64,000 bases of DNA from Asterias rubens. Taxonomy: Eukaryota. The stretch lies in NCBI RefSeq assembly GCF_902459465.1, contig NC_047073.1, positions 5,890,001 to 5,954,000 on the forward strand. Reading direction: 5' to 3'. A program made the position numbers and the translations under genes. Each line of letters opens with the position of its first letter. The first letter of the stretch is position 1. Positions 6,073 through 29,924 of this stretch are shown here, in pieces. The notes under the pieces were generated by a model. It saw only the letters and a program-made list of their open reading frames with translations, did no database searches and had not been told where the DNA came from.

Positions 6073-6191
6073 GGAATGTTTGAAAGATGCAGGGTAGCGG
6101 AGGGTGGGAATATGTTCTGGAAATTTTTGGAGCCAGGCTTCTTGAACCGATGGAGCGGTGAGTTGTTGTAGTCTTTAGTCAGACCAGCATC
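6073..6191 (-). CDS. PTBP1: PTB RRM3-4 linker and RRM4 start ([40 protein letters not shown])
   Basis: Invariant PTB motif [30 protein letters not shown]; tttcag|GAT and CC|GTAAGT. Confidence 0.99.
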
Positions 6192-6521: not shown

Positions 6522-6619
6522 CGGCTGTCCCTCTCTCGGCATGGCCACCTCACGATACTTAGAGGGCGCTACCCTCAGCTGCTTCCCAAACAACTTCACA
6601 CTATTCAAGTTAGCAAGGG
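6522..6619 (-). CDS. PTBP1: PTB RRM3 end (ALANLNSVKLFGK...SKYREVAMPREGQP)
   Basis: ttttag|CC and CCG|GTGAGA; 98 nt; PREG motif. Confidence 0.95.
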
Positions 6620-6787
6620 CTAAAACAACAACAAAAATAAAAGTATTATCACAGTGACAATTGTTAAAGTTGGCAGGCCTCAAAATAACCCACCATCCAC
6701 AGCAATTGCTGTGACGCCCTGTGCTTTTGCTGTGGTGCCCTCTGCAAGGTTTCAATATAAACTTACATTTTCCCCGTAAAAGTTCCC

Positions 6788-6934
6788 ATAAGCCACTTCA
6801 GAGTGTCAGCGGCGCACGTACGTTACTGCTGACAACGGGGTTTGTCTATGTATTGTCAAAAGGATATGAGAGATAGACAAAATCCATTGTCAGCAGTAAC
6901 AGACATGCGCAGCTGACATTCCGAGGTGGCTTAT
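6788..6934. mobile_element. Palindromic MITE nested in an older repeat (about 6715-6975)
   Basis: ataagccacttcagagtgtcagc ... gctgacattccgaggtggcttat; the flanks rejoin to match the repeat at about 29425-29535. Confidence 0.7.
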
Positions 6935-7047
6935 TACCACTAGAAAATTGCTGTACCCCTTCAAGAGCTATATCCGGGTGTTGTCTTACTTGTGGGCTTG
7001 GAATGCAGGCTTGGAATGCAGGGTTGGAATGTGGGATTGAGTGGGTA

Positions 7048-7159
7048 GGGTTGGGGAAAGGCAGGGTTGGGGAAAGGCAGGGTTGGGGAAAGGCAGGGTT
7101 GGGGAAAGGCAGGGTTGGGGAAAGGCAGGGTTGGGGAAAGGCAGGGTTGGGGAAAGGTA
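7048..7159. repeat. 16-bp minisatellite (gggttggggaaaggca) x7
   Basis: Seven consecutive copies read directly. Confidence 0.95.
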
Positions 7160-7329
7160 GGTAGGAGAAGGGGAAGGAATGGTGGACCCTACCTTTTTCA
7201 ACCTGGTGCCCTTAAGCCATCTAAATAAAGATATTTTCTCACCTTTGGCGATTGGGCTTAGGTTAGGGAGCAGGGTTAGGGAGCAGGGTTGGGAGGATTG
7301 AAAGGTAATGGGAGGGGGTTATACCGTAC

Positions 7330-7422
7330 CTGTCTGAGCCTGGTGTGCATCAGCCATCTGAATTAGTGCGTTGTCTCGCTTCTCGTACAAAATCTTAACT
7401 CTTTTCACGTCACCATATACCC
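7330..7422 (-). CDS. PTBP1: PTB RRM3 exon ([30 protein letters not shown])
   Basis: Matches PTB VYGDVQRVKIL...NALVQM; ttacag|GG and CAG|GTACGG; 93 nt. Confidence 0.97.
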
Positions 7423-8022
7423 CTGTAATAACCACAGCATTATAACAGATATTAACTCTCAAATTCTGGGGCAGATCAATAAATTTGAATATTAGTTTAA
7501 GTTAGGGTTAATTAGTAGTTACCACCCGGTTAATAACTTAACAATTCTTGTAAGCTTATAATTGAACACCTAAGCCGTGATCAAATTAATCCTTAAAAAT
7601 GCCTAATTTCAATACGTCAATCAATCTTCTAAGTAGCATGAAAGAAATAAATTTGTTTAAAGAAGCTTTTGGCCAAAAAGGTTTGAAATGCCAAAAACAA
7701 ACTTAAAGCAAGATTTTGAGCTACAATTTGTGCTTGTTCAAAAAGTAGAGAGTCTTAAAACAACTAAGGCTAAAATTTGGAAGTAATAATAAGAGTTATT
7801 TTTCAATGATTAACAAAATAATAACGACAACAAAACAAACCAAATCAAAACTATCAGAAGACAAATCTCCCAGAGGAAAATAAACTCAACCCAAACCACA
7901 AACAAAACTTGACTAACCCTTTCGTGAACCGTGAACCTAAATGTGTTGACTGTCAAATTACTTTTTAAAACCTACAAACAGTTTTGAGTTTTAGAAGCTA
8001 CTGTACCAAATTTCGAGGTCCA

Positions 8023-8177
8023 ATAGACCTTATGCACATGACGTCATTTCAGTACGGCGCCCCCGCATTGAGGTCAAAAGGAGGTTGTTCATTGGCCAAT
8101 CTATGTGCGTTTCGATTGTATCTTCACCGTTTGACCTCAAAGATGGCGGCTGGATGACGTCAATGCATAAGGTCTAT
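8023..8177. mobile_element. MITE with ATAGACC...GGTCTAT termini
   Basis: atagaccttatgcacatgacgtca ... tgacgtcaatgcataaggtctat. Confidence 0.75.
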
Positions 8178-9614
8178 ATGAATGGCTCTCACTGGCAGTA
8201 AATTTCAATCCAGGACGCTGTTTTCAAAATTCAAAGATCTGAAATGTCTTTCAAAAAGATGACATTTTACCACCACCAAAGGTTCCTCTTCTTGAACTTG
8301 TATTCCCCCCCCCCTTGCCACACCCTCAAGAAAAAAACATGTTAAAACAAAGATTGTTACAATATTTTCCCCTTTTCAATACTTTTTGGTACAGTATATT
8401 GGTAAACGAAAGGGTTATATAAACAAACAGACAGCAAAGCCATTGAGGGTTTTGAATCGTGGTGGCCGATAAAAGATAGGTGTTGTGCGAAGGGAGATTG
8501 GTCATGCAAGACTAATTTTATATCTCTGACTTGTTGTCAATTTTCTTAGTTTGTTTTCATAACAAAATTCTTATGAAAGAAGGCTTGGTGTAACACCACA
8601 AATTGTCTTTTTGAATCAATTTCATTCTTGATTTCTGTGTGCAACTATAAACAATTTTTTAAAAAAATTGGCTTTTCAAGAAGATTCTAGAAAATCCGAT
8701 CACAACTTTTATCCTCAAGAACTCTACAATGTACAAAACCTTTTTAATGCTTTAAATTGAGATGATGTAATTTAACCCTTTTTTTTTACAGTCAGTTGTT
8801 AAGTGTCAATGTTATTTGTTTTTGTTCACAGCAAAGAGGTCATTTAAAAATCGTTGGGGGAAAACTACACATGCATCTAGTCAACACTTCCTATCAGGTC
8901 AAGAATCATGCAAAAGCCAAGAGATTTAGAGTTTTAGATGTTCTTATGTTTTGATTCCTTTTTTTTCTTTTGCTTTGTGTTACAGAGTTTCCCAAAGAAA
9001 TAATAAGAGGGCTTAGAAACAGACACACCTAAATTCAGGAGTATTAGGTATATAAAACAAACCAAACCACAGCAAACAAAATCATAAATATACACCCCCA
9101 CTAATGCAATGGATTATTCCATTCAATATCAAAATCAGATATAAAAAGGAGAGTCCATTTCGGTAGTTCAAAAAAATACTTCAAAAAAAGCTTTTAGTTA
9201 TAAGTTTCTCAATAACTGTGCATCAAGTTTTTTTTTCAAAACAAATCCATCAAAATGTTGCTTGTGACATTTTTCTCGCAAATTGGCAAAAATTTCAAGC
9301 AAGGCAACAATGGTAGTTTTTGTTAAGGTTGCGATTCTAATCATGTATTGTTTTTTTCCACAAGTAAAAAAAAAAGCTTTTCTATTTGTTGGGGCGACAA
9401 CAATAATAAAACCTGCACCACAAACTCTGCTAAATTCTGCTCAACTCTCATGAACAAGGGTTTGCTCTCTCAACAATGACTTGCTCAATACAACTTGTTA
9501 TATTTTCTAACCCCAACAAGAAACATGAATATATTGCAAACCACAAGTTGAGAAAATAATTTCGCGTGAAAACAAAAGACCTTTCATTCTGGCATTGACA
9601 TCTTGTTTAAATGT

Positions 9615-9747
9615 TAGGCCGTGTCCGAATTGGCGACTTCGGCTACAGCTACGGCTAGGGCGCGCGCGTCTGCTATTCTTCAACACTGACAGACGTGCTG
9701 ATCTAGCCGTAGCTGTAGCCAAAGTCGCCAATTCGAACACGATCTTA
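9615..9747. mobile_element. MITE, family copy 1
   Basis: taggccgtgtccgaattggcgac ... gtcgccaattcgaacacg; near-identical copy at 15888-16021. Confidence 0.8.
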
Positions 9748-10651
9748 CATTCATTTCAGTGGCCTTTTTTGGAATCATGGCCTCCGGCTTTGGTTCCGGC
9801 TTTGGTTCCGGCTTAGGCTCCACAGGGACACACAATATTATTGTCAGTGAAACCAACAGCTACAGCCAAAAGCCGCAACCGAACTGAACGACTTTGGCTA
9901 CGGCTATGCAGCAGCAATGTTGAAGGGTTGGCTTTTTCATCCATCTGGTCATAGCCACTACCAAAGCCGGACACAGCCATAGCCAACTGTTATCTTCAGT
10001 GTAATTTCAACAAAGATAACCGCCAATGCGCACCTTGAGTTGGAGAAGACTTGAGCAGAGTTTAACAGGGCATAAATAAACATAAATGCTAAGCAATGAT
10101 ACAAAGGTTAATTAACTCAAAACGGTAAGGAGGGCTGGGGAGTATTTTGCAGACCACTGCATTATTGACTTGTTGAACTTAAGAGTACCACTGAGGCTTC
10201 AGTAAAGCTGTACTGAGAAATTTGTGTAAAGCTAAACAGCTAAAGGCATTATTACACGATAATAACAAAGATGGAGCTAATGCATTTTAGTAAGTTTCAA
10301 ATACATGGATTGTATTGGAAATCTAAAAATGCTCTTCCACCATAGGTTTCCAGTTCTAGTATTTTGATAGAATTTAGGTGTTTTTTGTTTTTTCCAGACT
10401 CTTTACAGGCATGATGTTCCAGTTTAGTGTGTTCAAAGTTTGATGTAATTTTTTTGAATAACATGTCGCAAATGAACTCACTGGACAATGGTCTGCAAAT
10501 ATGGGTAGGGGGGAGGGAGGGTGGTCTAGGATCTAGGGTATGGTTAAGGTTAGGATGGAGGTGGTGTTGGGGCAATAAAGGATTGGGTTAGGGGGTAATT
10601 TGGTCAAGGGGTTGAAGGGGTAAGGGGACAAAAACGTAAAATAGTGCATAC

Positions 10652-10685
10652 CAAAGAGGGTAAAGAGAGCCTGAGGCGTGACGAG
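10652..10685 (-). CDS. PTBP1: 34-nt RRM3 exon (LVTPQALFTLF-G), equivalent to PTBP1 exon 11 / PTBP2 exon 10
   Basis: gcatag|CTC...TTTG|GTATGC; exactly 34 nt; matches VTPQSLFILFG. Confidence 0.96.
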
Positions 10686-12245
10686 CTATGCGACACGTGT
10701 AGAAGGCGAGAGGTTGTGAGGGCGATACAGCGACAATATGACACATAGGAGGCAGAAAGAGGAGAGATGGAGAGAGAGAAAAAAATCAACAATTTTAAAA
10801 ACAATAATCATGTTATTTTGAGGGGGGAAACATTTGGTGCATGGGCATCGTCACCAGGTGGCTAAACTGGGCTATATTATCACCATGATAACGCATCATC
10901 GCAGGCAGTGATCATCTAACTTTATCTAGTCAACTTTCTTTGAAACAGAATACAAAGGAATAATTGTAGTGATTGTTGTACTTTTGTGCTCCAGGTTTAA
11001 CCAGAATTGTTTATGTTTGCATCTATAAAATAATAAGCTCTACATTAACACATGCATATTTTTAAAAATCGCTTTTTAATCTTCTGAAAATATTGTTACG
11101 ATTGCTTTGAAAATTTCAATTATTTGCACTTTTCAAATCAATAAAATGACTAGAAAAATTGCAATGACAAAGCAGCCACACATGTCTAGTTTTCCTGATA
11201 AAATCAACCTTTGAGAGGGCAAGGCCATTTTCATTTTGCAAAGGGCACTTCTATTGGAAAATCTTAACACCTACGTGGATTTTTTGTAGGGCACCATGGC
11301 CAAGGCTAGAGGTCATAGCCCTGGCCTCGGTATAATTCATGAACGAACTTTCTACCCAAATTAAGAATGAATATACAGTTTTAAAGGTGCCATTCCCGCT
11401 TAAATATCACATGCCTCTGTCTCAAGTACACAGACGCATGTACAAAAGTCAAGATTGCCACTTCGTAAAAAGGGGTCTGTATGCAACATGGCAAATATAA
11501 GAATACGACTTGCGTATATACAAAGAAAAGTCATAAAAATGCAGCAGGGAGTATACACTAGGAGTTAAAATCCGTAGCTGAAGATAAATAAAAAGCCGAA
11601 AAATAAGAGAGAATACTGAAGCCCCTCTTACCAGGCATTCAATGAGTTTTAAGGACTTGTCAGAGATATAATGTCAAGGTATGAAACAACTGTAGGAGCT
11701 AAGAACTAAATTGCACAGACTCGGGGGCTGTGACATTAAAACATGCAGAGAAGAACTTCATTTATACATGTATGTGTCAAGACTGGAAGCTGCTGACTGT
11801 GTCTATAAAGGGCTGGGAAATCTGACAAAAGATAACAAGTTTCTAGTTTTGGTTTTGATCAAGCATAACACAAGGATTGAACATACTTATTGATTGAACC
11901 TGATACATGTAAGTCATGCACTGAAGAAAGCATTGAACATTGAATCTGTAAAACTTGTGTGGTAAATACATCCTTATGAGGAGTTGAACATTCAACTAAT
12001 TTCCATTGTTCCATTAGATCACTGGGTTTCATAAAATATTCCTGAAATTAGAAGGCCACTAACTTATTTGAAAAAGAAAAACTTTTAGATTGTTTTTCGC
12101 TGAAAAGAAAGAGTGGTCCTGCCAAGTCTACTCTGAGAGGGAAGTGACTTTTGAAACTTTTTCTAGTGTGTTGAAGTTCACCCTGTCTATTATTCTTTTC
12201 TAAAAAGAAGGCCATCAACTGAGTTGGGAAGGCAAAGCAACTTAC

Positions 12246-12451
12246 TTCAGTGTTGAGATTGCTGACTAACAGTACTGGTGTCCCTTGCATGTTGTGCATG
12301 CTTTGCATGCTTTGCATGCTTTGCATTCCCTGCATCCCCTGCATTCCGTGAAGGCCTTGCATTGCTAGAGTGTTTTGGAAACGCAGGGCAGCTGCCGCCG
12401 CTGCGTTCTGCTGCATGCCACCTCCGATGAAGGCACTACCAAACCCAGGAA
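12246..12451 (-). CDS. PTBP1: PTB linker and RRM3 start (VPGFGSAF...MQG repeats...TPVLLVSNLNTE)
   Basis: VLLVSNLN is the RRM3 RNP2; atgttag|TT and GAA|GTAAGT; 206 nt. Confidence 0.95.
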
Positions 12452-13832
12452 CTAACATGGCAGGGGATAAATAACATAGAAAAAGGTTAGATATATGGCA
12501 AACTCCTAGCCTGGTTACCATTCAACTGTTTACTTCACAAGTTTCTTTCTTAGTGAGCATATTGTTTTGTTTTCTCTCTTCAGATCAATATCAGATTATT
12601 CAATTCTCAGTCAGTTTTCAACAACAAAATATTTTGTATTTACATATCCACACACAAAAGTGGATTCCAAAAAGTTAAAAATACAGATCTCTTGAAACAG
12701 TTATAAACTTTGTAAAAACAAAAGTCAAAGTAATTCATATATTATAAGAAATGGAGGCTGAGTTAATGAGAAATAATATTTTCAGTAATTTAAAGAGGTG
12801 AAGAAAAAAAAAGTCTGAAAAAGAAAATGGTCCAAACAGATGACTAAGAATTGAGAATTCCCGCCTGAGAGAAGCAGTACATCTGAAGAACTACGACACC
12901 CACTTGTTGTGACCACCGCCAGTTCTGACCCCACCCACATTGCACATTCGTATGTATAAGTCAACGGGCTATTAATCAAAATGAAGCTGGTCTTCTTTAG
13001 AATTTTGCTTGTGTTTTGTCTAAACAAAATGTGAGATATATCTTCTTTTTCCTTGCTCATAAAATGTTTCTCCTTAGCATAAAGACGTATAGCCCACAAA
13101 CTTGTGGTTTTAGCCTTCAAGAAAGGCTCTGCTAGGGTATAAATGTCAAAACTTTTCTTTTGCAGCACACAAACTTGTTACAAATTAGAAAGAAACAAGA
13201 ACGAAATGAAAAAATGAAATGAAATTAAGAAGGAAACTTGGGGAATTGAGGGAAAAAAAACGGTCTGTGAACAAATTTAGAGGTTTTGCAGTGCAGGATT
13301 GTGGATGCTATGATTGCAGTAAACAGCCCAAGTAGAAGATGTTAGGACATTCAAAGCAGACCAACCGGTCAGGCCATTGCCAACTAGCAAGTCACGAGTC
13401 TCTCAATAGAACTAAGAAATTATCAGATTCTTTCCTGGAATATAGCTATTTTTCTACGGAATGAAGGAACTCTGTAATACTCTAGGGGTCAGCAGACTTC
13501 CTTGTCTCTTTCCATCTGGCAATGTTGCTCAGATCAAAACAAACAACAATGACTTTTAGAGGCAAAACTAACTCAATTGGACCCAAGTCACTGTTTTCTA
13601 CTGTGCCAACACGTTGCTTTTGCACAGACCTTTTCGCAAGTACCCATTGCGCAAGCGCTTACCGCTGAATGAGGTCCTTTCTGGTCTAGCTAATGATTGC
13701 TAGCTAGACCAGGATGCACCTCATTCCATGCCTACGGCGACAATGTCTATGGTCAATGTACCACAGCGCCCTCTAAGGGCTATAGGTCACAAGATCTGAT
13801 GTATTAGAGCTTGTACGCTAACACCACAAGAC

Positions 13833-13937
13833 AAATTATGGCTTGCTATTGCTACGGCTATAACTAGGGCGGGACTGCATTTGTGACAAATGCAGTCCCG
13901 CCCTAGTTATAGCCGTAGCAATAGCAAGCCATAATTT
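13833..13937. repeat. Perfect 52-bp inverted repeat with 1-nt spacer
   Basis: Arms are exact reverse complements around g13885. Confidence 0.92.
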
Positions 13938-14769
13938 TGTCTATTCTTCTTTGAGAGTGCAAAGCCAACAGCCACAGTTGTTTACATGGTCTAATGTTGT
14001 TTGCCAAACCACCTCTGGCTTGGGCTCCACCAGTCATTTTGATAGCTTCAAACAGGCAGGGGGGAGCCTAATGGTTACCCATGATTTTTATGAAGTGACA
14101 CAGTCTGCTGCCACCGGTGTCTCTGATTGGTTGCTCTATCATGAGGTAATGATGCTGAATACTACAATCATAGCAATGAAGTGGTTTTGAACTATCGTAA
14201 GCACGGACCGTGACCGTTCGGTAAATGGAAACATGTGGGGAGGTGACAATGATTGAGCTCAACTACAAACTCATTAAATGTTAATTTTAAACATGCTGTC
14301 AGTGACAGAGCCTTGTGGTTAATGGAACTTTGCATCAAAACACAACATGCCCACATTAACAAGAACTCAAATTAGAAATAAATAAACTGTGATTTACAGA
14401 TATTAAACTATTTTAAAAACCTGCTCATTATTTAGCTTGGTTTTTTATTAATGCAAAACTCAACTCCCCCGTGACTAAAGTGGTACTGTCAAGAACACTA
14501 AGAATCTAAGGCATAGGAACATTCCAACACTGAAAGAAAGGTAAGTGCATAAAGCAAAAGAGCACCAAAAAGTTGAGATAGAAAATCAGAAGCTTCAAAA
14601 TTTCAGAATTAGATCGAGCTCTACGAAATGGATTTGTTTGGGTCAACTTTACAACTCATCAAGTTGCCAAAAAGTGTCCAAAAAACAGAAAAAGGTTAGA
14701 GATTGAAAAGGTCGGGAGAAAAAGATTTTTCCCAAAGATTTTTAGTTGGTTTTTGTTTTGTGGGTATAC

Positions 14770-14871
14770 CTGCCGCCGCTGGAAAGCCCGCTAGCGTGGC
14801 AGCTGTCGGACTAAATGGTGACTGACCCATGGATGCTATCTGTGAAAACGGATTTGACATCATTCCGTGTC
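14770..14871 (-). CDS. PTBP1: PTB RRM2-RRM3 linker exon (GHGMMSNPFSQ...AGFPAAA)
   Basis: tgtttag|GA and CAG|GTATAC; 102 nt, phase 1-1, open frame; Ala/Pro/Gly-rich like PTB linkers. Confidence 0.8.
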
Positions 14872-15887
14872 CTAAACAAAGGGGTAAGAATACGCGTACC
14901 TCTTTACTGATTATCAGTCTCAAAATCAAAATCACAAAATATACCAAGAAGAAAATAATACTGTAAAATGCCACAGCAAGATGGAACTAGTTATTGAAAG
15001 GAAGCTCGGCATGATATCAAAAAAAATCAAATTAAAGACAAAAATGAAGCATTTGTAAGTAACTTCATATTATTCAGAAGTGGTTTACAAGACCTGAGGT
15101 TTTGCCTCTTGAGATTGTAACCATCCACAAACTATACCATCTGAATTGTTTTCTTTCGGAAAGTTTGTCAATAAGCTATTTTAGAATTAGATTTTGAATA
15201 AAATGTTTGGTACAACGACTTGATTGGCCACTGGAAAGCCATGGGATTCAAGTGACTGTCTCTCTGCTTGATAACTTTTTTCTGAGGTATCTGAACAATT
15301 TTGGATTCATTTACAAAATGTGTCTAGGATGACAAAAAAACATTGATACTAACAAAGATAGTTTCATGCATTACCACTTCAACATTGAGGTGTAAACAAA
15401 ACAAACAAAAAAATTATGAAACCGTTTTTAAAATTGATTGTGAGAAAATTGAAATTACATGAGTTAGATAACAATTGTTTTCCACATCTAAACAGTTAAA
15501 TGTTTTTACCAACATCAAAAATTGTTAATCAATTAAAAAGTAAACAAAAATTGATGAATTCTATAAAATAAATAAAAAAAGGGGGGGAAATGGGTGAAAA
15601 ACAATTAAAATGTGTGAGGTTACATTAAAAACAAAATATTAAATAAACATCAACATACTTGTAAAATGTAAATAAAAACAACAACAACAATCATGAGGAA
15701 GTTAATATTGCAGGGGAAAATGGTGTTAGATAGATTGTTAGGACTTGGCAGCCATTTTGGTCTGGTTCCCTAAACGCACTGTGTTCTTCCTCACAATGGG
15801 AAGGTGTCAACATGAGAAGTACCAGTCTATCTGATTCAGCCCTGAAGTGCATTATAAGGACAAAATGGCTGCCATTTCATAAAAATC

Positions 15888-16021
15888 TAGGCCGTGTCCG
15901 AATTGGCAGCTTCAGCTACAGCTACGGCTAGATCAAGCACATCTGCCTATTCTTTAACACTGACAGACGCGCTGATCTAGACATAGCTGTAGCCAAAGTC
16001 GCCAATTCGGACACGGCCATA
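15888..16021. mobile_element. MITE, family copy 2
   Basis: taggccgtgtccgaattggc ... gccaattcggacacggcc; homologous to 9615-9747. Confidence 0.8.
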
Positions 16022-16440
16022 CACTGTGAGGAAACATTAAGGCCAGTTGGACAATGATGCTAGCTTTAAAAATACTATTTTGGTGAAAGTGTAACTTTCT
16101 GCACAAAAATGAAATGCATATTTAAACAAAAATACAAATGCAAGAATGGCAGTTAGCATAGTGAAATTATTGAAACGTGTCAAACAAATCAAGCAAACAT
16201 TGATGAAGACTGCCAAGAATTTGCCTATATATTCAAATGGAAATGAGAGGGCCCTTTTGCTATGAATTTGGCTTTCAAATAACCAGCCCAAATTGTGCCA
16301 CTCTTTTTTACCCCAATACAAACAGTTGTCAACCCAGTGGTACCCATACTTACCCCATATTTCAAATGAATTGACCCTTTATTGTAACAATCCTTGCGGC
16401 AATCCCCTAAAAAATTTCCATTTTTCACCCAATGAGTCAA

Positions 16441-17200
16441 TCTAGTATATCCCACATGTACCCATCATTAAGCTAGTTCCATCTAATCTCCAAGGTTCAA
16501 TTAATGAGTTAACCCAGTAGATCCTAATGTAGCTATTAATGTCCCCAGTTCCATACAATCTCCAGGGTTCACAATATGATTTTAAACCCAGTAGATCCCA
16601 CATGTACCCATCATTGGCCCCGATTTCATTCAATCTCCAGGGTTCACTCAATGAGCTACCCAGTAGATTCCACATGTACCCATCATTGGCCCCAATTCCA
16701 TTCAATCTCCAGGGTTCACTCAATGAGCTACCCAGTAGATCCCACATGTACCCATCATTGGCCCCGATTTCATTCAATCTCCAGGGTTCACTCAATGAGC
16801 TACCCAGTAGATTCCACATGTACCCATCATTGGCCCCAATTCCATTCAATCTCCAAGGTTCACTCAATGAGCTACCCAGTATATTCCACATGTACCCATC
16901 ATTGGCCCCAATTCTATTAAATCTCCAGGGATCACTCAATGAGTAAACCCAGTATATCCCACATGTACCCATCATTGGCCCCGATTCCATTAAATCTCCA
17001 GGGTTCACTCAATGAGTTGACCCAGTAGATCCCACATGTACCCATCATTGGCCCCGATTCCATTCAATCTCCACAGTTAACCCACTGAGTTAAGCCAGAA
17101 CCCAATGAATTAACCCAGTAGATCCCAAATGTACCCATTATTAGTCCGAATTCCCTCCAACCTCCAGTGTTAACCAAACAAGTTAACCCAGTGGATCCTA
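16441..17200. repeat. 72-bp minisatellite, about 10 copies, degenerate at the edges
   Basis: Unit aatctccagggttcactcaatgagctacccagtagatcccacatgtacccatcattggccccgatttcattc; appears as a 24-aa period in the ORF track. Confidence 0.93.
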
Positions 17201-17219
17201 AGGGTTTCCCCCTCCTTAC

Positions 17220-17385
17220 CCCCTAATCCAATGCCATCTCCTGGGTGGATACCATCTCCCGTTGGTAGGTCACGTGTGTAATCTCTGCTCTTCTCATTGT
17301 TGTATTTGACAACGAGTGCAGGGAGTTTAGAGAACTCAATGTGCAAGGTGCAGCAAGCATTGTAGATATTCTGTCCGTCTAAGGC
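17220..17385 (-). CDS. PTBP1: PTB RRM2 C-terminal exon ([20 protein letters not shown]...[18 protein letters not shown])
   Basis: Near-identical to the PTB signature [19 protein letters not shown]...KYNNDKSRDYT; ttgtag|GCC and GGG|GTAAGG; 166 nt. Confidence 0.98.
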
Positions 17386-17489
17386 CTACAAAAGGAGACA
17401 CAAACATTCTTTAATACCAATAATTCCATGGCCTTTTTGAGGGATGGTGGACACACTAGGAGTGCAGTTTGGTTTGGGTATAATATAAG

Positions 17490-17626
17490 TTATCACACCA
17501 GCGCGAGTGGAATACAAAAAAATATAGCGCTTCTGCCTCCCATATCCAACGAGGCCGAATGCCGAGTTGTATATGGGACGCAGACACGCTATATTTTTTC
17601 GTATTTCACGAGCGCGTGTGTGATAA
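17490..17626. mobile_element. Palindromic non-autonomous element (ttatcacac...gtgtgataa; possibly Crypton-like)
   Basis: Long imperfect inverted arms (gaatacaaaaaaatatagcg / cgctatattttttcgtattt); superfamily tentative. Confidence 0.55.
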
Positions 17627-18159
17627 CAAATTTATCTTCCAGTCTCACTTGCAACGTGCAAAACTTAAAGCTTAAGAGCATTAGTTAACGCGCACAAAGT
17701 TGAGAATGTAATTTTTGCACTGTCCATATACGGAGCGTGACAAAATGACATTTCACAATACGCAGAGAAAGTAGGATATAAAACAGAGGTCGTAGCATAT
17801 ATGTTTTTACCCCCCTAGTAGTTCGAGCTTCTGATTGGTGGATTAGCGCGTACTGGAAGATAAAGACCATTATCATGTTGCAACCATCTTGGACATGTTC
17901 CCTGCCTCCATAACAGTAATGAACACCAGTATTCATTGTAATAAAAGGAACCAGACTATTTCTCATTCCAGCCTCAGTTTGGTTACATTAACTTGAATGG
18001 GGGACACTCAAGATGGCCGTACCATGACAAAGGTCAATACAGACAGATTTACTCAAACCCAACAGTGTCATACATGTAGTATTGTGTCCACCATGTCTCA
18101 AGCCTGGCTTATGCAAATGGTTCTGTAGTCACCACACAGTTTGCTTTAATTGCAAGATA

Positions 18160-18310
18160 AATGGCTCAGTGGTTTCTTTTCTTCCCTTTATCTCTGCGGA
18201 CCCTAGTTCGAATCCAACCTCAGACCAGAGCCTAGCATGTGGATTGGGTTTCCATTAAGTCCCTACTGATTGCGTGGGTTTACTCCATTAGGGTTTTTTA
18301 TCCCATATAA
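18160..18310 (+). mobile_element. tRNA-derived SINE fragment
   Basis: tggctcagtgg A-box-like and gttcgaatcc B-box motifs. Confidence 0.55.
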
Positions 18311-18446
18311 ATTAGTTTGACCACTTTGTCACATTCCCTTTAAATGTATAAAAAACTAATAATAATAATAATAATAATAATATTTGAGCCCTAAACAAAT
18401 ACAAAATCTTACAGTTTCCTAAAGAATGGGCTACTTGTGTACTTAC

Positions 18447-18505
18447 AATTTTGGCATCATTAGCTTCTTTGCTATTGTTGAACTGGATTAGAGCTTGGAA
18501 AACAT
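18447..18505 (-). CDS. PTBP1: PTB RRM2 middle exon (N-VFQALIQF...DAKI)
   Basis: FQALIQF is the RRM2 RNP1; aaacag|AT and ATT|GTAAGT; 59 nt. Confidence 0.96.
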
Positions 18506-18872
18506 CTGTTTGGGAAGAGGACAAGTTAACAAGAGATTAGTTTTAAAACAATTACAATTAGAGCGGTTTATGATATTTAAATGAGGGCCGAATTTGATAT
18601 TTATAAACTTAATTTGCTTGGCAAAAAACAATGTAGGGAACCGTTACAATAAACATCACAAACATCCTGGGTACAAGGTTTGGTAAAAATGGGTCATCCG
18701 TTATTTAATAAGCTTGGGCAGTTTTTGTCTATGGTTAACCATCGCCAAACTATTGGGGTATTCAAACAAAACTACAAACAAAAACTGTGGAATTCAGTGC
18801 TTCCAGCACCAGCCCTTTACAGGGCTAAGCGTGGAACTCTGTGGCAAAAAGTCCCATGAAATAGAGCCCAGG

Positions 18873-19028
18873 TAAAGCCCGGTTCATACTTTTGATGTCA
18901 CATGGCTGTTTTTGCAGCGAATGTTTCGCAGGAGTTGAGCATAAGTCAACCGACGTAAATTATTCATTGCGATTTGTGACGTCAATCGTGTCGCATTCAC
19001 ATTCGCAGGAAGTATGAACTGGGCTTAA
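18873..19028. mobile_element. PIF/Harbinger-like MITE (TAA-flanked)
   Basis: taa-agcccggttcatactt ... aagtatgaactgggct-taa; second copy at 44177-44309. Confidence 0.8.
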
Positions 19029-19074
19029 GATGAGAGATCAACACAGAAGACTGACTTCATTTAGAAGAACTTAC

Positions 19075-19300
19075 TGTTCTTAGTGAAGGTGACTACCTTC
19101 AAGATTGTTCCATACTTGGAGAAGATTTGGTGTAAGGTGTCCACATTGACGGGGTAGATCATGTGTTCAATGACGGCACGGAGTACGTGCTGAGGACCTC
19201 CTGGGCTGTCTGCTACTTTGGGTGACGAGCTTATGGAGGAAAACTGATGCTGAGGCAGGAGTGCTTGTGTTGCTTGTAACGCTGCCTGGGCTGCCACGTT
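19075..19300 (-). CDS. PTBP1: PTB linker and RRM2 start (NVAAQAALQA...VLRAVIEHMIYPVNVDTLHQIFSKYG...FTKN)
   Basis: Clear PTB RRM2 match; atacag|AAC and AACA|GTAAGT; 226 nt, ends in phase 1. Confidence 0.97.
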
Positions 19301-20608
19301 CTGTATAATAGAATGCAGGGAAACAAAGGTGTTAGGAAAACAGTTTTTTTATATTAAACAAATCGCTCATCTCGTTAATTTCTCCAGACATTTATGGGGG
19401 TTGGTTACATGGAGCTGTTATAAGCAGAAGATATTGCTGGGCAAGTTTATTGGCTTAGCAAATATCACCTTAGTACTTGCAGATTGTAAACATAGAATAG
19501 ATTGCCTGTTTCTGCTATACGGGAATTGTACATTAAGCAGCTTAGATAAAGCTTAACATGTTAACCCGAGTTGAATTTCATCCGGTAACAAACTTACTAA
19601 TAAGGCTTTATTTAAAGGTTGCAGCCTTTTGGATTTTATTTTGAAGTTGAGGAGAGCGATAAGATTTTGTGAAAAAGTGCGAGAGGGTGAGATATACACA
19701 GAGATCATAAACAGATAGTATGAGTTTCCAGATTGTTTTTAAGAAACAGAGTACAATAACAGAAATAGTGAAACAATATCAAGTACAGTCAGATAGGTAT
19801 GGCACTTAGTTTTTAAACAGGCCTGGAATCACATTGAGGTCGTGACCTTTGACAACCCCTGTGGTCTTCGTTTTTACATGGCCACCCCTGTTCCCATAGA
19901 CGTGTTGATGTTCTTTTGGCAACGACCCCAGCCAATGTTCAATTCCAGGCATGTGTAAATGGACTTTACAGATGAGATTGAAAACTGTATACAGGTTGCT
20001 CAGAAAGGTCTTTGAACGAACTTTAACTGAAAAGTCAATGCCTGGAGTGAGCATTTCTAAGAATACATGTACAGGACTCCAAAATTGACACTTGACTGCA
20101 AGTCTGAGGCCAGTGATTTCAGAACCTAGGCATGTTGAGCTACAAGCCCTGAAGTCTTGTGAATTTTCGCCCCAAATTTGATAATATAACTTTTCTGTGC
20201 AAGTTCTCACCTTCAAATACATGCACTTTTTTTTCTTCTTTTTTACTTTGAATTTGTGTATTAAATTAGCCAAAGCCTGTCTGCTCACTGTATACAATTT
20301 TTCTAAACAGATAATATATGTTCCATGCTCAATAAAAGTATTCATAAATTATTCTCATCATGGTAAATTATTCTAGGGCATGTGAGATAATTTGACACAC
20401 AGTCAAATTATTCAGAGTCGCTGGAAAGACTTTACTGCTTAAATTCACTTACTGGGGAGTTTCAGACAGTATATGGCAACATACAAACCAGGTAATGTTC
20501 CATTGGTTATGTATTTCTAATGCACAATCAATATCGATCGTCTTTATACGTCTGCCACTACCAAGCAACCCCAAAACACTCCAATTGAAAACTGAAAAGC
20601 ATTCCTTT

Positions 20609-20780
20609 CAGGTCTGATACTTCAAGGAGGCAACCAAGGTGATTACCTCCTTGCCCCCTGGTTATTGCCTTGGTGCCCTTGAAACGCTCAAGTAGTAACT
20701 TACAGTTTCATCATAGGGTGCCTTGCATCCCATATAAAATGCCTTGGTGCCTTTGCCCTTTCAAAAAAAAACATGCATGA
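20609..20780. mobile_element. CAGG...CCTG short element (hAT-like MITE family)
   Basis: Shares ggtcattgccttggtgccc...gccctttcaaaa with 36137-36271, 39856-40025 and reverse copies near 11200-11340 and 31840-31900. Confidence 0.7.
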
Positions 20781-21397
20781 TTGTCTAAAACAAATTTAGT
20801 GGAGGACAAATTTTCCCCGTACATTTATATACATGTATGACTTAATAATGCGGTTTTGCCTTGTGCCACAGCAGCATAAAAAGTGTGCAGAGTCACTCGA
20901 TTCCTAACATATGGTGACTTTCTGGCATTTAAATGTCAATGTAACATCCCTGAAAGAACAGAGCACCGTGTAGTTTGGAAATTAAAATGTTAATTGTATC
21001 TGGCATGACATCCAGGAAGTTCAAATGAATCAAATTTCACTCTTTTTTTTCTAAAGCTGAAACTCTGTCTTTTTTTTTATTTTTCAACATTTTGTTTATT
21101 ATCAATATCAAGCATTGTGTTTGGGATTATCACAGGAGGACTAAAACAGTCACTTTAAATTTTGTTTGTGGAAACACCACGTGTGTATTGCCAGGCAGAT
21201 TTAGTTCTTTCGAGGGCTGTCTGGCTTTATATTCTACTACCGCAGAGTAGGTTTTCGAGAAAATCGATCGGCTTTTCAATTTGTAAGGGTAGACTTGAGC
21301 ATGGAACATATAATACGTTGTTTATTTTATGTGTAAATGTCTTAAGGTGAAGAAGATGGAAATATAAGAAAAGATAAAAAGAGACACCAACAGACAC

Positions 21398-21514
21398 GGT
21401 GTTCTTGTCCAGATTGCCAGAGTAGGAGTCACTGTCTGGGAGGAGAGTCCCTGACGAGGAGGGATTGTTTAGCACAGCATTCACAGCAGCAAGGGCAGCC
21501 TGTACCGCCACCGT
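21398..21514 (-). CDS. PTBP1: Candidate alternative cassette exon in the RRM1-RRM2 linker (TVAVQAALAAVNAVL...SGNLDKNT)
   Basis: Acceptor cttcttgtag|ACG in phase 0; peptide resembles PTB AQAALQAVNSV..SGNL; donor uncertain (ACC|GTGTCT gives 117 nt in frame, TTG|GTGTCT at 21388 gives 127 nt and a frameshift). Confidence 0.6.
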
Positions 21515-24500
21515 CTACAAGAAGTAGGAAGTTGAGAAGAGACGAGGCGAAAGGGAAGAGGGAGGAGGATGAGGAGTGTGGGGAGTATGGTGAGAGGTGG
21601 CATTGGAAGAAAGAGTATTGGATTGAGGGAGATGGGAGGAATTTAAAAGGGGTAGAAATGGGAGGAGTCATGCAAAATGGGAGGAATCATGCAATGTGGT
21701 TGGAGCCAGGCATTGTGGGAGGAGCCAGACAATGGAGTGAAGCCATTGAAGTTGGATTAAAGGTGCAATTGGATTATTTGGGATGAGATGAGATTGAACA
21801 ACGGACAGATTCAAGATTTGATGAAGTCAAAGAAAGAGAGATGAGCAGAAGACAAGTATGGTTATAACATTGGGGGATCCAAAATGGGTTGGGTTACAGT
21901 AGGAGTGGATCAACAGAAGGGCGGAGTCACAAAAGGGGTGGGGTCACAGAGGGGTGGAGTCACATGAGGGGCGGAGTCACAAAAGAGGGCGGAGTTACAG
22001 AAGTGGTAAAAACAAAAAGTTGACAAAGCAAACAATCATGATCAACATGACACACGGGGAGGTCAGCAAGTGAGATCAAACCAAATGTGGGTGATATAAA
22101 AATAGACAATTTATTTTTTTTAAGTGAGGTGAGGTGAAGGAAGTAGGTGAAGCAGAACAAAATGAGGATTTGAGCCAGATGGCATTGTATGAGTTCCACA
22201 AATAGAGAAGCGTTTTGATTAGTGGACCAAGGAAGGGTCAGGTAAAGGAGGAAGAAAAGACAAAGAGTTAAATGACAGATCAAGTTGAAATCAAAGAATT
22301 ATAAATGTACATGTTTTTTTCAAGAGGAACATGTTTACATCCATGATATAATAATTAGGTTGTGATGTGAAATGAGAAAGAAGTTGATAAGGTTATGTCA
22401 AGATGGATTGGAGGAAAAGAAATTATGAAAAGAGAAAATAAAAAGAGAGTTAAGGCTGATTAGAAATTGATTTCCACATTTGGTTTATATTTCTTTCAGT
22501 AATACAATATTGAAAACCAAGACTAACAACAACTTGTAGAAGGTATTGATGAACTAAAACTGGGAAAAAATGTTACTATCAAAAGTGACAAAGTTGTTTT
22601 CTATTAGGAGAAATGGTTTTCGACATTGTGGCTTTTTGTACAATTATCTTGTTTCCTTAATGCATTAAACATCATCGCAACTATAGTGAATGTGCGTAAC
22701 TGAAGTCTTCGATCAAAATGAGACACTTCTCATTTGCCATAATTTGAAGGTCTCTGGTATTGTCTGGACTCTGTCCTATTAACTAAAATGGTCTGAATTG
22801 CTACAGGACTTTGATTTGAGTCCGTAAAACCGAGTTGATTTTGATGAATTGCAGAGTTAAAGTAAGTACCGTTGCATTGTATTGTGAGTTGCGCCCCCCA
22901 GTGTCCTATACACAATAAGATGTTATAGTGTTAAAGGATTGTTAAGAAAGGATGCAATTTATTTTATTTTTTCAAACAAACAGCGAGGGGAAAATTAATG
23001 AGAGTAAAAAAACAAGTTAGCGATAAATCATACAATAAGTTAGGAAATGAACGTGAAAGTTTAATAGATGATTTTATAATGATGTGAAATAGCGGTTGAA
23101 GTTAATGTTGAGGATGAAGGATTGAAGTATACGTTAAGAAATGGTTTAAGGCCAGGAGTAAGAGAGGAGGGGTGGTAGGTAGAGGGAGGAGAGATGATAA
23201 GGAGGATGAGAAATTAAAGAAAATTGAAGGTGATGGGAGTGACGCAACCAAAGGAAAGACAAGATGAGCAGGGATGTGGAAAACGCATGAGTACAGAGAT
23301 GAAGACAAATTCAAGATGAGGAATCAAACGGGGAGATATGGGGGAAAGTTGGAGGAGGTTTTCAAGAAAGATGAAATCAGAAATGAAGGGGAGAAACAGA
23401 AAAAGGAAGAGGAAAATGGGAGAGATAAAAAAATAACAAGATGTTAGCATTCAAGGCATCAGATATGAATCAAAAAAGATGATTTGCAGAGAACAGATGC
23501 ATAAGTTTCTTTTCAACAATTAACAAAAGAAAAACAACTTGTGCTGAAAAAGTTTTACAATGTTTTCTAATTACCAAAAAAATTAATTCAGCGAGAAGTT
23601 TGAGGGTTTATTTTGAAGTAAGAATCAGAATGGATCGGGATGCATGTGAAACAACATAGCATGATGAAGCACACGAATCGACACACAATCAGAAGGATAC
23701 TCTACAACAGTAATCCCCGGTATTTTGAGGGGACAAGCAAGGACGAACAACCCTTTTTCACAGCATTCCTTTCTTTCTACACACACACAAAGTATTATTC
23801 GTTTTCAATGACAATTGTTTGTCAAAAAGCCTTAGGACTGGTAAGAGTGTTGGCTCTAAGGACGGTCGCCCATGGTAACACTACACGTTGTTATTTCAAA
23901 TGTGTGTAGAGCAGTACAGCAAACCAGAAGCCTTTGATACAGTACACGGAAATTGTGCCTAGCGGCCCTGATGCCCCCCCCCCCCCCTCCCCTCCCCTAA
24001 ATAGAATTGGGACTGGTGAGACAAATTTCTTTCGTTTTTTTCCCCCGCTTTTTTTTTTTTTTTTTTTCAGCACCTTTTCTTTGCTGGACAATGGAGGAAA
24101 TGTTGTTCCCTACTGGGATGAATTGTGTGACTGTCTGGAATGTACAAGGGTGTCTGGTTAGGAGCGATAATTGGTTTACATTAGCACCGGTATAGCACAA
24201 CAGGTGTATTGCTGAGAAATTGGGGGAAGGGTGGGGGAAACAGCATTGGAGATATCTAATGAAGGAATTTTGCAATCTTCTGTATCCAAACAGCTTTTCT
24301 TCTACTTTCTTGAAGGTTTTCTTCATCTAGTGTCAATACAAAATAACAACAAAAGCAACAACTAATTAAATACAAACACACAAACCCCCCCCCCCCCCAC
24401 CCAGACAAGCAGACCAAAAGAACGGTTTTAAATTCTTCACAATTTAAAGACGAACCTACATTTAGACTGTAGAACTTGTACAGATGTGTGGTTACTGGCC

Positions 24501-25732
24501 AAATGGTAAAGTTAACTGGTGTTTGGCTAAAAGTGGTCCAGTGGGTATTTCAAGCAATGGCATTCCTTTCTAAATCTTGACATAGAACTTTCATTTACAA
24601 AATGTCTTGAAAAAAATTGGGACCCCCTCTTTTTGTAAAAAAAGAAAAAAATTGCAAACCCCAATTTAAAATTATGCTTAGAACCCTTACACAGATATCT
24701 ACCCCAACCCTAATTACATACTTTACTTGGAAGGTTCTTTTCTTTCACATTCTTCACCTCTACCCCTTATATCATAAGCTGTGTAAACACAATAAGTAGC
24801 TGAGCAAAAAATAGTGTCGGCGACCAGAAATGGTTTACCAGCCAAAATACCATTTCACATGTACAATAATAATTTGTAACTGGTTTCCTGTTCAATTTAG
24901 CTAAGCCAAAAATTTGTTAAGCACTTTTCTTTTGTGGCCTTGCCGGTAACATTTGAGTTCCGTCTCCGAAGTTACACTAGTTCTTGACATGCTGGCCACA
25001 GACAGTGGCTGAGACAATCTTGCTTTTAGTTCAACGACAACTAAAACTCTCGGCCGGCCTCGCTGATCTTGTTTACCTGTATCCCCGATAGATGTTGTCG
25101 TTTTGCGCAGCGATTCCTTAATCCCAAACGAATAGATTAACGGCGCCTATGAGTGGTTTGTACACCAGGGCTTGGCTAAGGTGACATATTTGCCGGGTTG
25201 CCGTGGTTACAGTCTATTCACGGTTTGGTCTGAGAATAGCGTATTCAAGAGTCGTTCCGCAGCAGTGCAAACTTGACACCTTGCGAGGGGGAATTAATCA
25301 TGCATGCTTGGGTTTTAATCCAGCCGGTGTCTTTGTGCATTTCTCGACAAGATGGCCCAATTTTTACGATGAGAAAATGCATTTTATTACATACACATTA
25401 ACTTGAGAGAATCGGGGAGTGATGTTAAGCGGATGCTGGCTTGCGCATTAAAGCGGATTTGCACCCCACCTTAACGGTCAAGGGTTGTGAAATCAAACCA
25501 GGATGGAATTTGTGAGAGCGCTTTAAATTACCCCCCCCCCCCCCCCCCCAACCCAGAGGGTATTATGTGTAATCTGTAGTACTTTTATATATAAATATTC
25601 AGGTACTTCGCCTTTTTAGGGGTATCATGTTTTTATATGCAACGGCAATAATTAATTATGGGCCACATTGTTGGCAAAGAGAAACATCTTTGAGCTTCAG
25701 TCATTGGTAAGGCATTGCAGATTATTGCAACA

Positions 25733-29777: not shown

Positions 29778-29924
29778 CTGATGTGCCGGGGAGTTATCTG
29801 TCTTCAACTCCTGATGGGTGGAGAACTGGACAAAGACAGGCTTGCCGTGCAGTGTAGTCGTGACTTGGTTGTAGTAGGATATCATTTTTGTGGATTGGCT
29901 AACATCGGCAAGCTCTATAAATGC
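29778..29924 (-). CDS. PTBP1: PTB RRM1, C-terminal part (AFIELADV...VQFSTHQELKTDNSPAHQ)
   Basis: Matches PTB AFIEM...IQFSNHKELKTD; atttcag|GCA and CAG|GTAGGT; 147 nt; missed by the ORF track. Confidence 0.96.

What the first reader, a model, noticed from the sequence alone, without database searches (positions are those of the whole stretch)
21515..22463. 939-nt AG exclusion zone with a predicted branch point ~940 nt from the acceptor
Seen: the plus strand has no CT dinucleotide in 21517-22455 (about 80 Cs by hand count, none followed by T), so the pre-mRNA has no AG for 939 nt before the 21514 exon. At the 5' end are CTAAT (22463-22459) and TTAAC (22453-22449), followed by a strong tract (tctctttttattttctcttttc). 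The zone is full of UCUU/CUCU and has two Rbfox UGCAUG motifs (21669-21674, 21688-21693). Known: branch points usually lie within ~40 nt of the AG, and human PTBP1 exon 11 has one a few hundred nt away. This zone would be far longer.
Basis: partly seen in the sequence, partly recalled or inferred. Interest (0 to 1): 0.85.

Follow-up and report, generated by a model that had tools for sequence, protein, structure and literature searches.

The report
Long AG-free tract before cassette exon
In the sea star Asterias rubens, the gene for the splicing repressor PTB has a 939-base pyrimidine-rich intron stretch with no AG at all, directly in front of an optional in-frame exon; this is the known mark of a distant-branch-point exon, here unusually long, but the branch point itself is not mapped.

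Summary
On the gene's sense (minus) strand there is no AG from 22455 down to 21517 (939 nt). Base composition predicts 17, and each third of the zone is AG-free on its own. None of 1228 control 300-nt windows elsewhere in the window lacks AG.

The window holds the Asterias rubens PTB gene. The "21514 exon" is real. It is a 123-nt in-frame cassette exon (21514-21392), annotated in RefSeq isoforms of A. rubens and A. amurensis, and it is skipped in the dominant assembled mRNA.

A second, unrelated 601-nt AG-free zone precedes an annotated 36-nt cassette micro-exon (22905-22870).

Within this gene, constitutive acceptors have AG-free zones of 23-102 nt. Four of the five exons that vary among the annotated isoforms or correspond to the vertebrate regulated exon have 176-941 nt.

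The zone therefore fits the known class of distant-branch-point exons (Gooding 2006), which includes vertebrate PTB exon 11.

A branch point at about -940 is plausible: CTAAT and TTAAC with the best pyrimidine tract sit at the zone's 5' edge. It is unproven. Fifteen YTRAY motifs lie between -243 and -946, and a minimal UnA lies at -20.

The length is not unprecedented (human PTPRS 1126 nt, unvalidated). UCUU/CUCU counts match composition alone.

Verdict: a new, extreme member of a known kind.

The parts
21517..22455 (-). AG exclusion zone 1: 939 nt, 70% pyrimidine, no AG on the sense strand
21515..21516 (-). Acceptor AG of the 123-nt cassette exon (cttcttgtag|ACGGTG)
21392..21514 (-). 123-nt in-frame cassette exon of 41 aa (TVAVQAALAAVNAVL...NLDKNTVS). 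Its first 15 codons are a diverged copy of the start of the next exon. Present in A. rubens isoforms X1-X3 and A. amurensis X1-X5 and X7; absent from A. rubens X4 and A. amurensis X6.
   Evidence: codon comparison
21386..21391 (-). Weak donor GTTGGT of the cassette exon, followed by about 50 nt of pyrimidine-rich sequence with five UCUU (21340-21391)
22459..22465 (-). Branch-point candidate TTCTAAT (A at 22460, -946). The boundary AG lies 3-4 nt downstream of it, inside the window where an AG is normally bypassed.
   Evidence: bypass rule from PMC1431707
22449..22455 (-). Branch-point candidate CCTTAAC (A at 22450, -936), just inside the zone
22427..22448 (-). Strongest pyrimidine tract of the zone (tctctttttattttctcttttc), directly after the TTAAC
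22062..22224 (-). Internal strong branch-point candidates: CACTAAT (A 22219, -705) and TGCTGAC (A 22063, -549)
21659..21734 (-). 19-nt tandem repeat (4 copies) that carries both UGCAUG motifs (21674-21669, 21693-21688)
21880..22007 (-). 17/33/50-nt tandem repeat (sense unit about UGUGACUCCGCCCCUYU) inside the zone
22908..23508 (-). AG exclusion zone 2: 601 nt, 0 AG against 9 expected, not homologous to zone 1
22870..22905 (-). 36-nt in-frame cassette micro-exon (DTGGRNSQYNAT) with weak donor GTACTT. It has proximal TTAAC motifs at -26 and -37 and a distal TGCTAAC plus pyrimidine tract at -539 (23449-23443).
29778..29924 (-). Upstream constitutive exon (end of RRM1, ...SPAHQ, phase 0)
19075..19300 (-). 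Downstream constitutive exon (alpha-3 helix, linker, first half of RRM2). The only part of 18700-24600 present in the long mRNA contigs.

Best explanation
The 939-nt zone is a selection-maintained AG exclusion zone in the 3' splice-site region of a regulated, in-frame 123-nt cassette exon of the Asterias rubens PTB gene.

Proposed mechanism, following the model established for vertebrate distant-branch-point exons:
- U2 snRNP engages one or more branch points far upstream of the exon. These lie at least about 240 nt away and possibly at the TTAAC/CTAAT plus pyrimidine tract at -936/-946.
- The second step of splicing uses the first AG downstream of the branch. Any AG arising between branch and exon would truncate or destroy correct exon use, so it is removed by selection.
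- The long pyrimidine-rich tract between branch and exon, with a short pyrimidine tract after the exon and weak donors, is a platform for repressors. PTB itself is the obvious candidate. These set the ratio between the skipped form (dominant in assembled mRNAs) and the form that includes the 36-nt and 123-nt exons.

What is shown and what is inferred:
- Shown: the AG depletion, the exon and its alternative use, the branch-point-like motifs, and the contrast with constitutive acceptors.
- Inferred: which branch point is used, that PTB is the binding protein, and the direction of regulation.

My sub-probabilities:
- The zone is maintained by splicing-related selection: about 0.85.
- At least one branch point further than 240 nt is used productively: about 0.6.
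- The -936/-946 site is a major branch point: about 0.3.
For: - AG depletion: 0 against 17 expected, uniform over all thirds of the zone. It is specific to AG on the sense strand, and no control window lacks AG.
- The zone ends exactly at the acceptor of an exon annotated in RefSeq isoforms of two species.
- The exon is alternative. Isoforms A. rubens X4 and A. amurensis X6 lack it. mRNA contigs of 674, 4706 and 5615 nt join ...CAG directly to 19300, with zero depth over 21458-22836 in four RNA runs.
- AG density is normal directly upstream (25 in 412 nt).
- A second, non-homologous 601-nt zone precedes the neighbouring cassette micro-exon.
- In this gene the constitutive acceptors have zones of 23-102 nt, mostly with YTNAY at -20 to -40. 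The cassette exon 2, the 34-nt exon, the micro-exon and the 123-nt exon have 191, 176, 603 and 941 nt.
- YTRAY motifs are absent from the last 243 nt and enriched in the distal 416 nt (11 against 6.3 expected).
- The most distal 237 nt is AG-free on its own (3.4 expected, P 0.03), which suggests selection reaches the 5' edge.
- Both cassette exons have the weakest donors in the gene.
- Precedent: PTB exon 11 (zone 381 nt, branch at -351 validated), nPTB exon 10 (438), ROD1 exon 2 (168) and Fugu PTB exon 11 (590). The mammalian three are PTB-repressed (PMC1431707, PMC1940037).
Against: - No lariat or branch mapping was possible.
- A minimal UnA (cucaAc) sits about 20 nt from the acceptor, and other constitutive introns of this gene (exon 9, exon 18) also lack a proximal YTNAY. 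A conventional branch point therefore cannot be excluded.
- The micro-exon has good proximal TTAAC motifs and still has a 601-nt zone. A long zone does not by itself prove sole use of a distant branch.
- UCUU and CUCU are not enriched beyond composition. Only UCCUC/CCUCC are mildly enriched (z about 3), so PTB binding is unsupported beyond pyrimidine richness.
- Both exons are in frame, so the vertebrate NMD-feedback logic does not apply here.
- No RNA structure brings the distal branch close to the acceptor (z +0.5).
- Conservation of the zone in other species could not be examined.
Confidence: 0.6

Rival explanations
1. Conventional or mixed branch-point use. The exon is normally spliced through a weak proximal branch (UnA at about -20, or -56/-77). 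The long pyrimidine-rich tract is primarily a silencer or binding platform. AGs are purged because any AG placed behind such strong pyrimidine tracts and the many upstream YTRAY motifs would be a potent cryptic 3' splice site. The zone then says little about a single branch at -940.
For: A UnA core is present at about -20. Constitutive exons 9 and 18 of the same gene also lack a proximal YTNAY. Zone 2 coexists with good proximal TTAAC motifs at -26 and -37. Human introns commonly use several branch points (PMC5959240).
Against: If upstream branch motifs are active enough to make an inserted AG harmful, they should also branch to the first real AG, which is the exon's acceptor. This rival therefore shades into the main model. 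The last 243 nt contain no YTRAY, while the distal part is enriched in them. In PTB exon 11, a well-scoring -51 branch motif was dispensable and the -351 one was essential (PMC1431707).
Confidence: 0.3
2. By-product of composition or repeats. A G-poor, pyrimidine-rich or repeat-derived sequence happens to lack AG, without selection related to splicing.
For: Three tandem-repeat arrays cover about 235 of the 941 nt. Gooding et al. describe a 369-nt human zone caused by a repeat. G is only 9% of the zone.
Against: 17 AG are expected from composition, and 12.5 in the non-repeat part. GA occurs 21 times. Control pyrimidine-rich windows have normal AG counts. The zone has no other copy in the window and is not homologous to zone 2. 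RNA depth over it is zero, while true high-copy repeats nearby reach depths in the thousands. The zone ends exactly at an annotated acceptor.
Confidence: 0.04
3. A constraint unrelated to this gene's splicing, for example a DNA-level property of a purine/pyrimidine-asymmetric tract or a feature read on the plus strand (where it appears as absence of CT).
For: The strong strand asymmetry (GC skew up to 0.7) could in principle favour non-B DNA.
Against: No plus-strand transcript or ORF of note is seen. Such models do not predict loss of exactly one dinucleotide, or an end exactly at an acceptor. The same pattern recurs before other optional exons of the gene.
Confidence: 0.03

Closest known systems
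Vertebrate PTBP1 exon 11 (with nPTB exon 10 and ROD1 exon 2): PTB-repressed exons with distant branch points
   Same: Same gene family. An optional exon lies behind an extended AG exclusion zone rich in pyrimidines, with a branch-point consensus and pyrimidine tract at the zone's 5' end. Zones are 381 nt in human PTB (branch at -351 validated), 438 nt in nPTB, 168 nt in ROD1 and 590 nt in Fugu PTB (PMC1431707, PMC1940037).
   Different: Here the exons lie in the RRM1-RRM2 linker, not between RRM2 and RRM3. They are in frame (36 and 123 nt), so they switch protein isoforms rather than triggering NMD. The zone is 1.6 to 2.5 times longer. PTB dependence is untested. The sea-star gene also has the 34-nt exon, with its own 176-nt zone.
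Alpha-tropomyosin exon 3 and alpha-actinin SM exon (the classical distant-branch-point exons)
   Same: A branch point and pyrimidine tract far from the acceptor (-175 in tropomyosin), an AG-free interval between them, and repressor sites within that interval and downstream of the exon.
   Different: The distances are several-fold shorter, and those exons are mutually exclusive pairs. Here two cassette exons are mostly included or skipped together.
Human PTPRS intron with an AG exclusion zone of 1126 nt (Gooding et al. 2006)
   Same: A kilobase-scale AG-free interval before an exon, with several candidate distant branch points (-1079, -829, -288). It is also unvalidated.
   Different: The PTPRS zone spans nearly the whole 1132-nt intron, and the mouse orthologue has only 229 nt. 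Here the zone is the 3' 69% of a 1355-nt intron, and a second zone closes a 6.9-kb intron.

Membership tests
Distant-branch-point / AG-exclusion-zone exons (Gooding et al. 2006) | AG exclusion zone of at least 100-150 nt ending at a genuine 3' splice site | tested here: met
   The zone measures 941 nt by their definition. The acceptor is confirmed by an exact match of RefSeq isoforms to 21514-21392.
Distant-branch-point / AG-exclusion-zone exons (Gooding et al. 2006) | The first exclusion zone is much longer than the second, so AG spacing is normal upstream of the zone | tested here: met
   25 AG lie in the 412 nt directly upstream. The median AG gap in the window is 12 nt.
Distant-branch-point / AG-exclusion-zone exons (Gooding et al. 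2006) | Branch-point consensus with an adjacent pyrimidine tract near the 5' end of the zone | tested here: met
   TTCTAAT (-946) and CCTTAAC (-936) are followed by a tract that is 87% pyrimidine.
Distant-branch-point / AG-exclusion-zone exons (Gooding et al. 2006) | No good branch-point candidate in the conventional -18 to -40 position | tested here: inconclusive
   No YTNAY lies within 55 nt and no YTRAY within 243 nt. A minimal UnA (cucaAc) lies at about -20.
Distant-branch-point / AG-exclusion-zone exons (Gooding et al. 2006) | The zone is not simply a repeat that lacks AG | tested here: met
   Tandem repeats cover about 25% of the zone. The remaining 706 nt still expect 12.5 AG. There is no second copy in the window.
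Distant-branch-point / AG-exclusion-zone exons (Gooding et al. 2006) | The exon is alternatively spliced | tested here: met
   Isoforms with and without the exon exist in two species. The dominant mRNA contigs skip it.
Distant-branch-point / AG-exclusion-zone exons (Gooding et al. 2006) | The long zone is conserved in orthologous introns | not testable with these tools
No other echinoderm locus was obtainable.
Distant-branch-point / AG-exclusion-zone exons (Gooding et al. 2006) | Branch point mapped experimentally far upstream | not testable with these tools
PTB autoregulatory AS-NMD switch (vertebrate exon 11 type) | Exon skipping or inclusion shifts the frame and creates an NMD substrate | tested here: not met
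   The 36-nt and 123-nt exons are both multiples of three, contain no stop, and are annotated as protein isoforms.
PTB autoregulatory AS-NMD switch (vertebrate exon 11 type) | PTB-binding motifs (UCUU, CUCUCU) enriched around the exon, and PTB-dependent repression | tested here: inconclusive
   Motif density is about 3 times the window background but equals the mononucleotide expectation. Dependence on PTB cannot be tested here.

The most novel reading that the evidence does not exclude
The TTAAC/CTAAT at -936/-946 is a productively used branch point. Sea-star spliceosomes would then find a 3' splice-site AG almost 1 kb downstream of the branch, more than twice the longest validated distance. 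Kilobase-scale AG exclusion zones would be a regular device for regulated exons in this genome: unchecked notes of this scan report 550-nt, 1.76-kb and nearly AG-free 3.9-kb zones before other optional exons. That would give a natural substrate for asking how the second catalytic step locates its AG. It would also show that standard lariat pipelines, which search only the last 250 nt of each intron, miss a class of branch points.
Probability: 0.27. Interest if true: 0.75.

Novelty: new member of a known kind. Interest (0 to 1): 0.45.

Why it matters
- It extends the link between AG exclusion zones and regulated exons from vertebrates to an echinoderm, within the same gene family. Four of the five exons of this PTB gene that are optional in the annotated isoforms or correspond to the vertebrate regulated exon carry long zones.
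- If the distal branch point is used, the known branch-to-acceptor distance would more than double. This bears on how the 3' splice site is chosen.
- The lariat-mapping pipeline I read (PMC5959240) searches only the last 250 nt of each intron, so it would miss such sites.
- For annotation, the zones are a cheap sequence-only flag for optional exons.
- The included exon places a second, more vertebrate-like copy of the RRM1 alpha-3 helix directly after RRM1. That helix is reported to respond allosterically to RNA binding by RRM1 (PMC7192611, PMC11417363), so the splice choice may change how RRM1 behaves.

Tried and rejected
- Reads: I laid four RNA runs on 18700-24600. Only the skipped isoform was assembled. 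This shows presence of skipping, not absence of inclusion, and it used the only read-laying run, so no lariat search was possible.
- Run index: two RNA runs of a sister species hold 4 of 24 sampled words of 21290-21610.
- Protein search with the exon ORF: nothing found, because full-length isoforms fall outside the tool's length range.
- Searches with a shrimp PTB and with a profile that included window exons: the first was dominated by arthropods. The second, mostly vertebrate hits, did bring up the Asterias isoforms that settled the exon question.
- Metagenome scan for relatives of the RRM2 exon: none found.
- A. amurensis locus: the gene range is too long, so no DNA was returned.
- Cluster names of ten representatives: no echinoderms among them.
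- RNA folding of the zone: no more stable than shuffles, so no structural bridging of branch and acceptor.
- My early donor guesses (117 nt in frame; 127 nt frameshifting into a TGA, read as a poison exon) were wrong. RefSeq uses TCT|GTTGGT, giving 123 nt in frame. I dropped the poison-exon and mutually-exclusive-exon ideas.
- Homology between the two zones: none found.
- PTB-motif enrichment beyond composition: none found.
Full report
**Observation**

CT occurs at plus 21515 and next at 22456. The sense strand therefore has its acceptor AG at 21516-21515, the next upstream AG at 22457-22456, and no AG in the 939 nt between them.

The zone is 38% U, 32% C, 21% A and 9% G. Composition predicts 17 AG and none is seen; none of 20000 shuffles reached zero. 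GA occurs 21 times, so this is not general purine-purine avoidance.

Further controls:
- Each third of the zone is AG-free on its own (P 0.0045, 0.0012, 0.009).
- After removing three tandem-repeat arrays, the remaining 706 nt still expect 12.5 AG.
- The gap is 50 times the mean sense-strand AG gap. The largest gap of every other dinucleotide is 8-16 times its mean.
- Outside the two zones, none of 1228 sliding 300-nt windows has zero AG.
- Pyrimidine-rich control windows have 8.6 AG observed against 8.7 expected.

**A second zone**

Directly upstream on the sense strand, 23508-22908 (601 nt) is also AG-free, against 9 expected. It is not homologous to zone 1, and zone 1 has no other copy in the window.

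**What the gene is**

ORFs on the minus strand showed PTB motifs. A profile search returned Asterias PTB proteins. The window encodes, exon by exon and without mismatch, A. rubens XP_033636984.1, "polypyrimidine tract-binding protein 1-like isoform X1". That is 18 coding exons from 55927 to 3748.

**The exon behind the zone is real and optional**

Alignment of the four A. rubens and seven A. amurensis RefSeq isoforms shows two in-frame cassette exons between the end of RRM1 (...SPAHQ, 29778) and the RRM2 exon (19300):
- A 36-nt micro-exon at 22905-22870 (DTGGRNSQYNAT), which sits behind zone 2.
- A 123-nt exon at 21514-21392 (41 aa, donor TCT|GTTGGT), which sits behind zone 1.

Isoform content:
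- A. rubens X1 and X3 have both exons.
- A. rubens X2 has only the 123-nt exon.
- A. rubens X4 has neither.
- A. amurensis X1-X5 and X7 have both; X6 has neither.
- The peptides are identical in the two species.

In four RNA runs, the long assembled mRNA contigs (674, 4706 and 5615 nt) cover only 19075-19303 of the stretch 18700-24600. The three extra bases (CAG) match the end of the 29778 exon, and depth is zero over 21458-22836. The skipped form is therefore the dominant one in those samples. Contigs drop minor variants, so this does not contradict the annotated inclusion forms.

Two other RNA runs hold 4 of 24 sampled words of 21290-21610, about what exon-only content would give, but I could not lay them.

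The first 15 codons of the 123-nt exon are a diverged copy of the start of the next exon. Nine residues are identical, and seven of those nine codons differ synonymously. This points to an old duplication kept under protein-level constraint.

**Context within the gene**

| Acceptor class | AG exclusion zone |
|---|---|
| Constitutive acceptors | 23-102 nt, mostly with YTNAY (often YTAAY) at -20 to -40 |
| Exon 2 (skipped in A. amurensis X3 and X7) | 191 nt |
| 34-nt exon, homologue of vertebrate exon 11 | 176 nt |
| 36-nt micro-exon | 603 nt |
| 123-nt exon | 941 nt |
| 99-nt optional exon (14869-14771) | 28 nt |

The 34-nt exon is not skipped in any annotated isoform. I count it here because of its vertebrate counterpart.

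The two cassette exons also have the weakest donors in the gene, GTACTT and GTTGGT. Most other donors are GTAAG, GTGAG or GTAGG.

**Where the branch point might be**

- No YTNAY lies within 55 nt of the 123-nt exon's acceptor, and no YTRAY within 243 nt.
- Fifteen YTRAY motifs lie between -243 and -946. Eleven of them are in the distal 416 nt, against 6.3 expected.
- The 5' edge of the zone coincides with TTCTAAT (A at 22460) and CCTTAAC (A at 22450), followed by the zone's best pyrimidine tract.
- The boundary AG is 3-4 nt after the first of these, inside the window where an AG is bypassed according to Gooding et al..
- The most distal 237 nt is AG-free, with 3.4 expected (P 0.03). This is modest evidence that selection reaches the edge.
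- Other good candidates are CACTAAT at -705 and TGCTGAC at -549.
- Against an exclusively distant branch: a minimal UnA (cucaAc) lies at about -20, two constitutive introns of this gene also lack a proximal YTNAY, and the micro-exon has good TTAAC motifs at -26 and -37 yet still has a 601-nt zone.
- The zone folds no better than shuffles (z +0.5), so nothing suggests a structure that shortens the distance.

**Which protein binds**

UCUU and CUCU are three times denser than in the window at large, but that is exactly what the composition gives. UCCUC, CCUCC and CUCCC are about 2.3-2.9 times over expectation in both zones (z 2.2-3.0). The two UGCAUG sites lie in one 19-nt tandem repeat. About 50 nt after the exon is pyrimidine-rich, with five UCUU. 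PTB binding is therefore a reasonable inference from precedent, not something the sequence proves.

**Comparison with what is known**

Gooding et al. 2006 (PMC1431707) defined this class.
- 165 of 67,334 human exons have zones of 150 nt or more.
- PTB exon 11 has 381 nt with a validated branch at -351, while a good -51 motif was dispensable.
- nPTB exon 10 has 438 nt, and Fugu PTB exon 11 has 590 nt.
- PTPRS has 1126 nt, unvalidated, with only 229 nt in mouse.

Spellman et al. 2007 (PMC1940037) show that PTB exon 11, nPTB exon 10 and ROD1 exon 2 all combine such zones with PTB repression.

The sea-star zones fit the class on every feature I could test. The "no conventional branch point" feature was inconclusive. 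Conservation and branch mapping were untestable.

They differ from the vertebrate PTB switch in three ways: position (the RRM1-RRM2 linker), consequence (in-frame isoforms, not NMD) and length.

Unchecked first-stage notes of this scan list further long zones before optional exons elsewhere in this genome: 550 nt, 1.76 kb, and a nearly AG-free 3.9 kb. If these hold, the architecture is recurrent in A. rubens rather than unique to this gene.

I found no paper on this in Asterias. The lariat pipeline of PMC5959240 searches only the last 250 nt of each intron, so it would not see such branches.

**Verdict**

This is a real, selection-shaped AG exclusion zone in front of a real, optional exon. It is an extreme new member of a known class, in the gene family where that class is best known. 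The specific claim of a branch point about 940 nt away remains a plausible but untested prediction, at about 0.3.

Noticed in passing
window 10652-10685 (minus strand), zone 10686-10862: The 34-nt exon homologous to vertebrate PTBP1 exon 11 / nPTB exon 10 is present in the sea-star gene (acceptor ...gcatag|CTCGTC, donor TTTG|gtatgc). It has its own 176-nt AG exclusion zone. Skipping it would shift the frame.
   Followed up: partly
window 45017-45118 (minus strand), zone up to 45311: Coding exon 2 (102 nt) is absent from A. amurensis isoforms X3 and X7. It sits behind a 191-nt AG exclusion zone that is 75% pyrimidine.
   Followed up: partly
window 14771-14869 (minus strand): A 99-nt exon (GHGMMSN...AAA) is optional; it is missing from A. 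rubens X3 and A. amurensis X4. It has only a 28-nt AG exclusion zone, so not every optional exon of this gene has a long one.
   Followed up: partly
window 21392-21514 versus 19256-19300: When included, the cassette exon puts a second copy of the post-RRM1 alpha-3 helix directly after RRM1. This copy (QAALAAVNAV) is closer to the vertebrate QAALQAVNSV than the constitutive copy (QAALQATQAL). The constitutive helix is pushed about 41 residues away.
   Followed up: partly
window 18897-19093 and 20473-20866: These stretches in the introns flanking the RRM2 exon attract summed RNA contig depths of 1,000-19,000, with many partial and rearranged matches. They look like high-copy transcribed repeats (SINE- or MITE-like).
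   Followed up: no
window 16442-17008: An intronic tandem array with a period of about 66 nt reads as repeated 22-aa units (LGSSLSEPWRLNGIGANDGYMW) on the minus strand, and is also open on the plus strand. It is probably a minisatellite, not coding.
   Followed up: no
window 22834-23014: A marine metatranscriptome contig (run X4, 181 nt, no mismatches) runs co-linearly across the micro-exon and both of its splice sites. It is either unspliced pre-mRNA or DNA carry-over.
   Followed up: no
window 21517-22455 and 22908-23508: The C-rich pentamers UCCUC, CCUCC and CUCCC are about 2.3-2.9 times over composition expectation in both zones. CAUC and UCAU are over-represented in zone 2 (z 5.5 and 3.1). 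This may point to binders other than PTB, for example poly(C)-binding proteins.
   Followed up: partly
protein P0001 (643 aa, unnamed representative): This PTB homologue contains the first half of RRM2 and its preceding linker twice in tandem (residues about 100-180 and 205-287). This could be a gene model that strings together two alternative copies of that exon in another animal.
   Followed up: no
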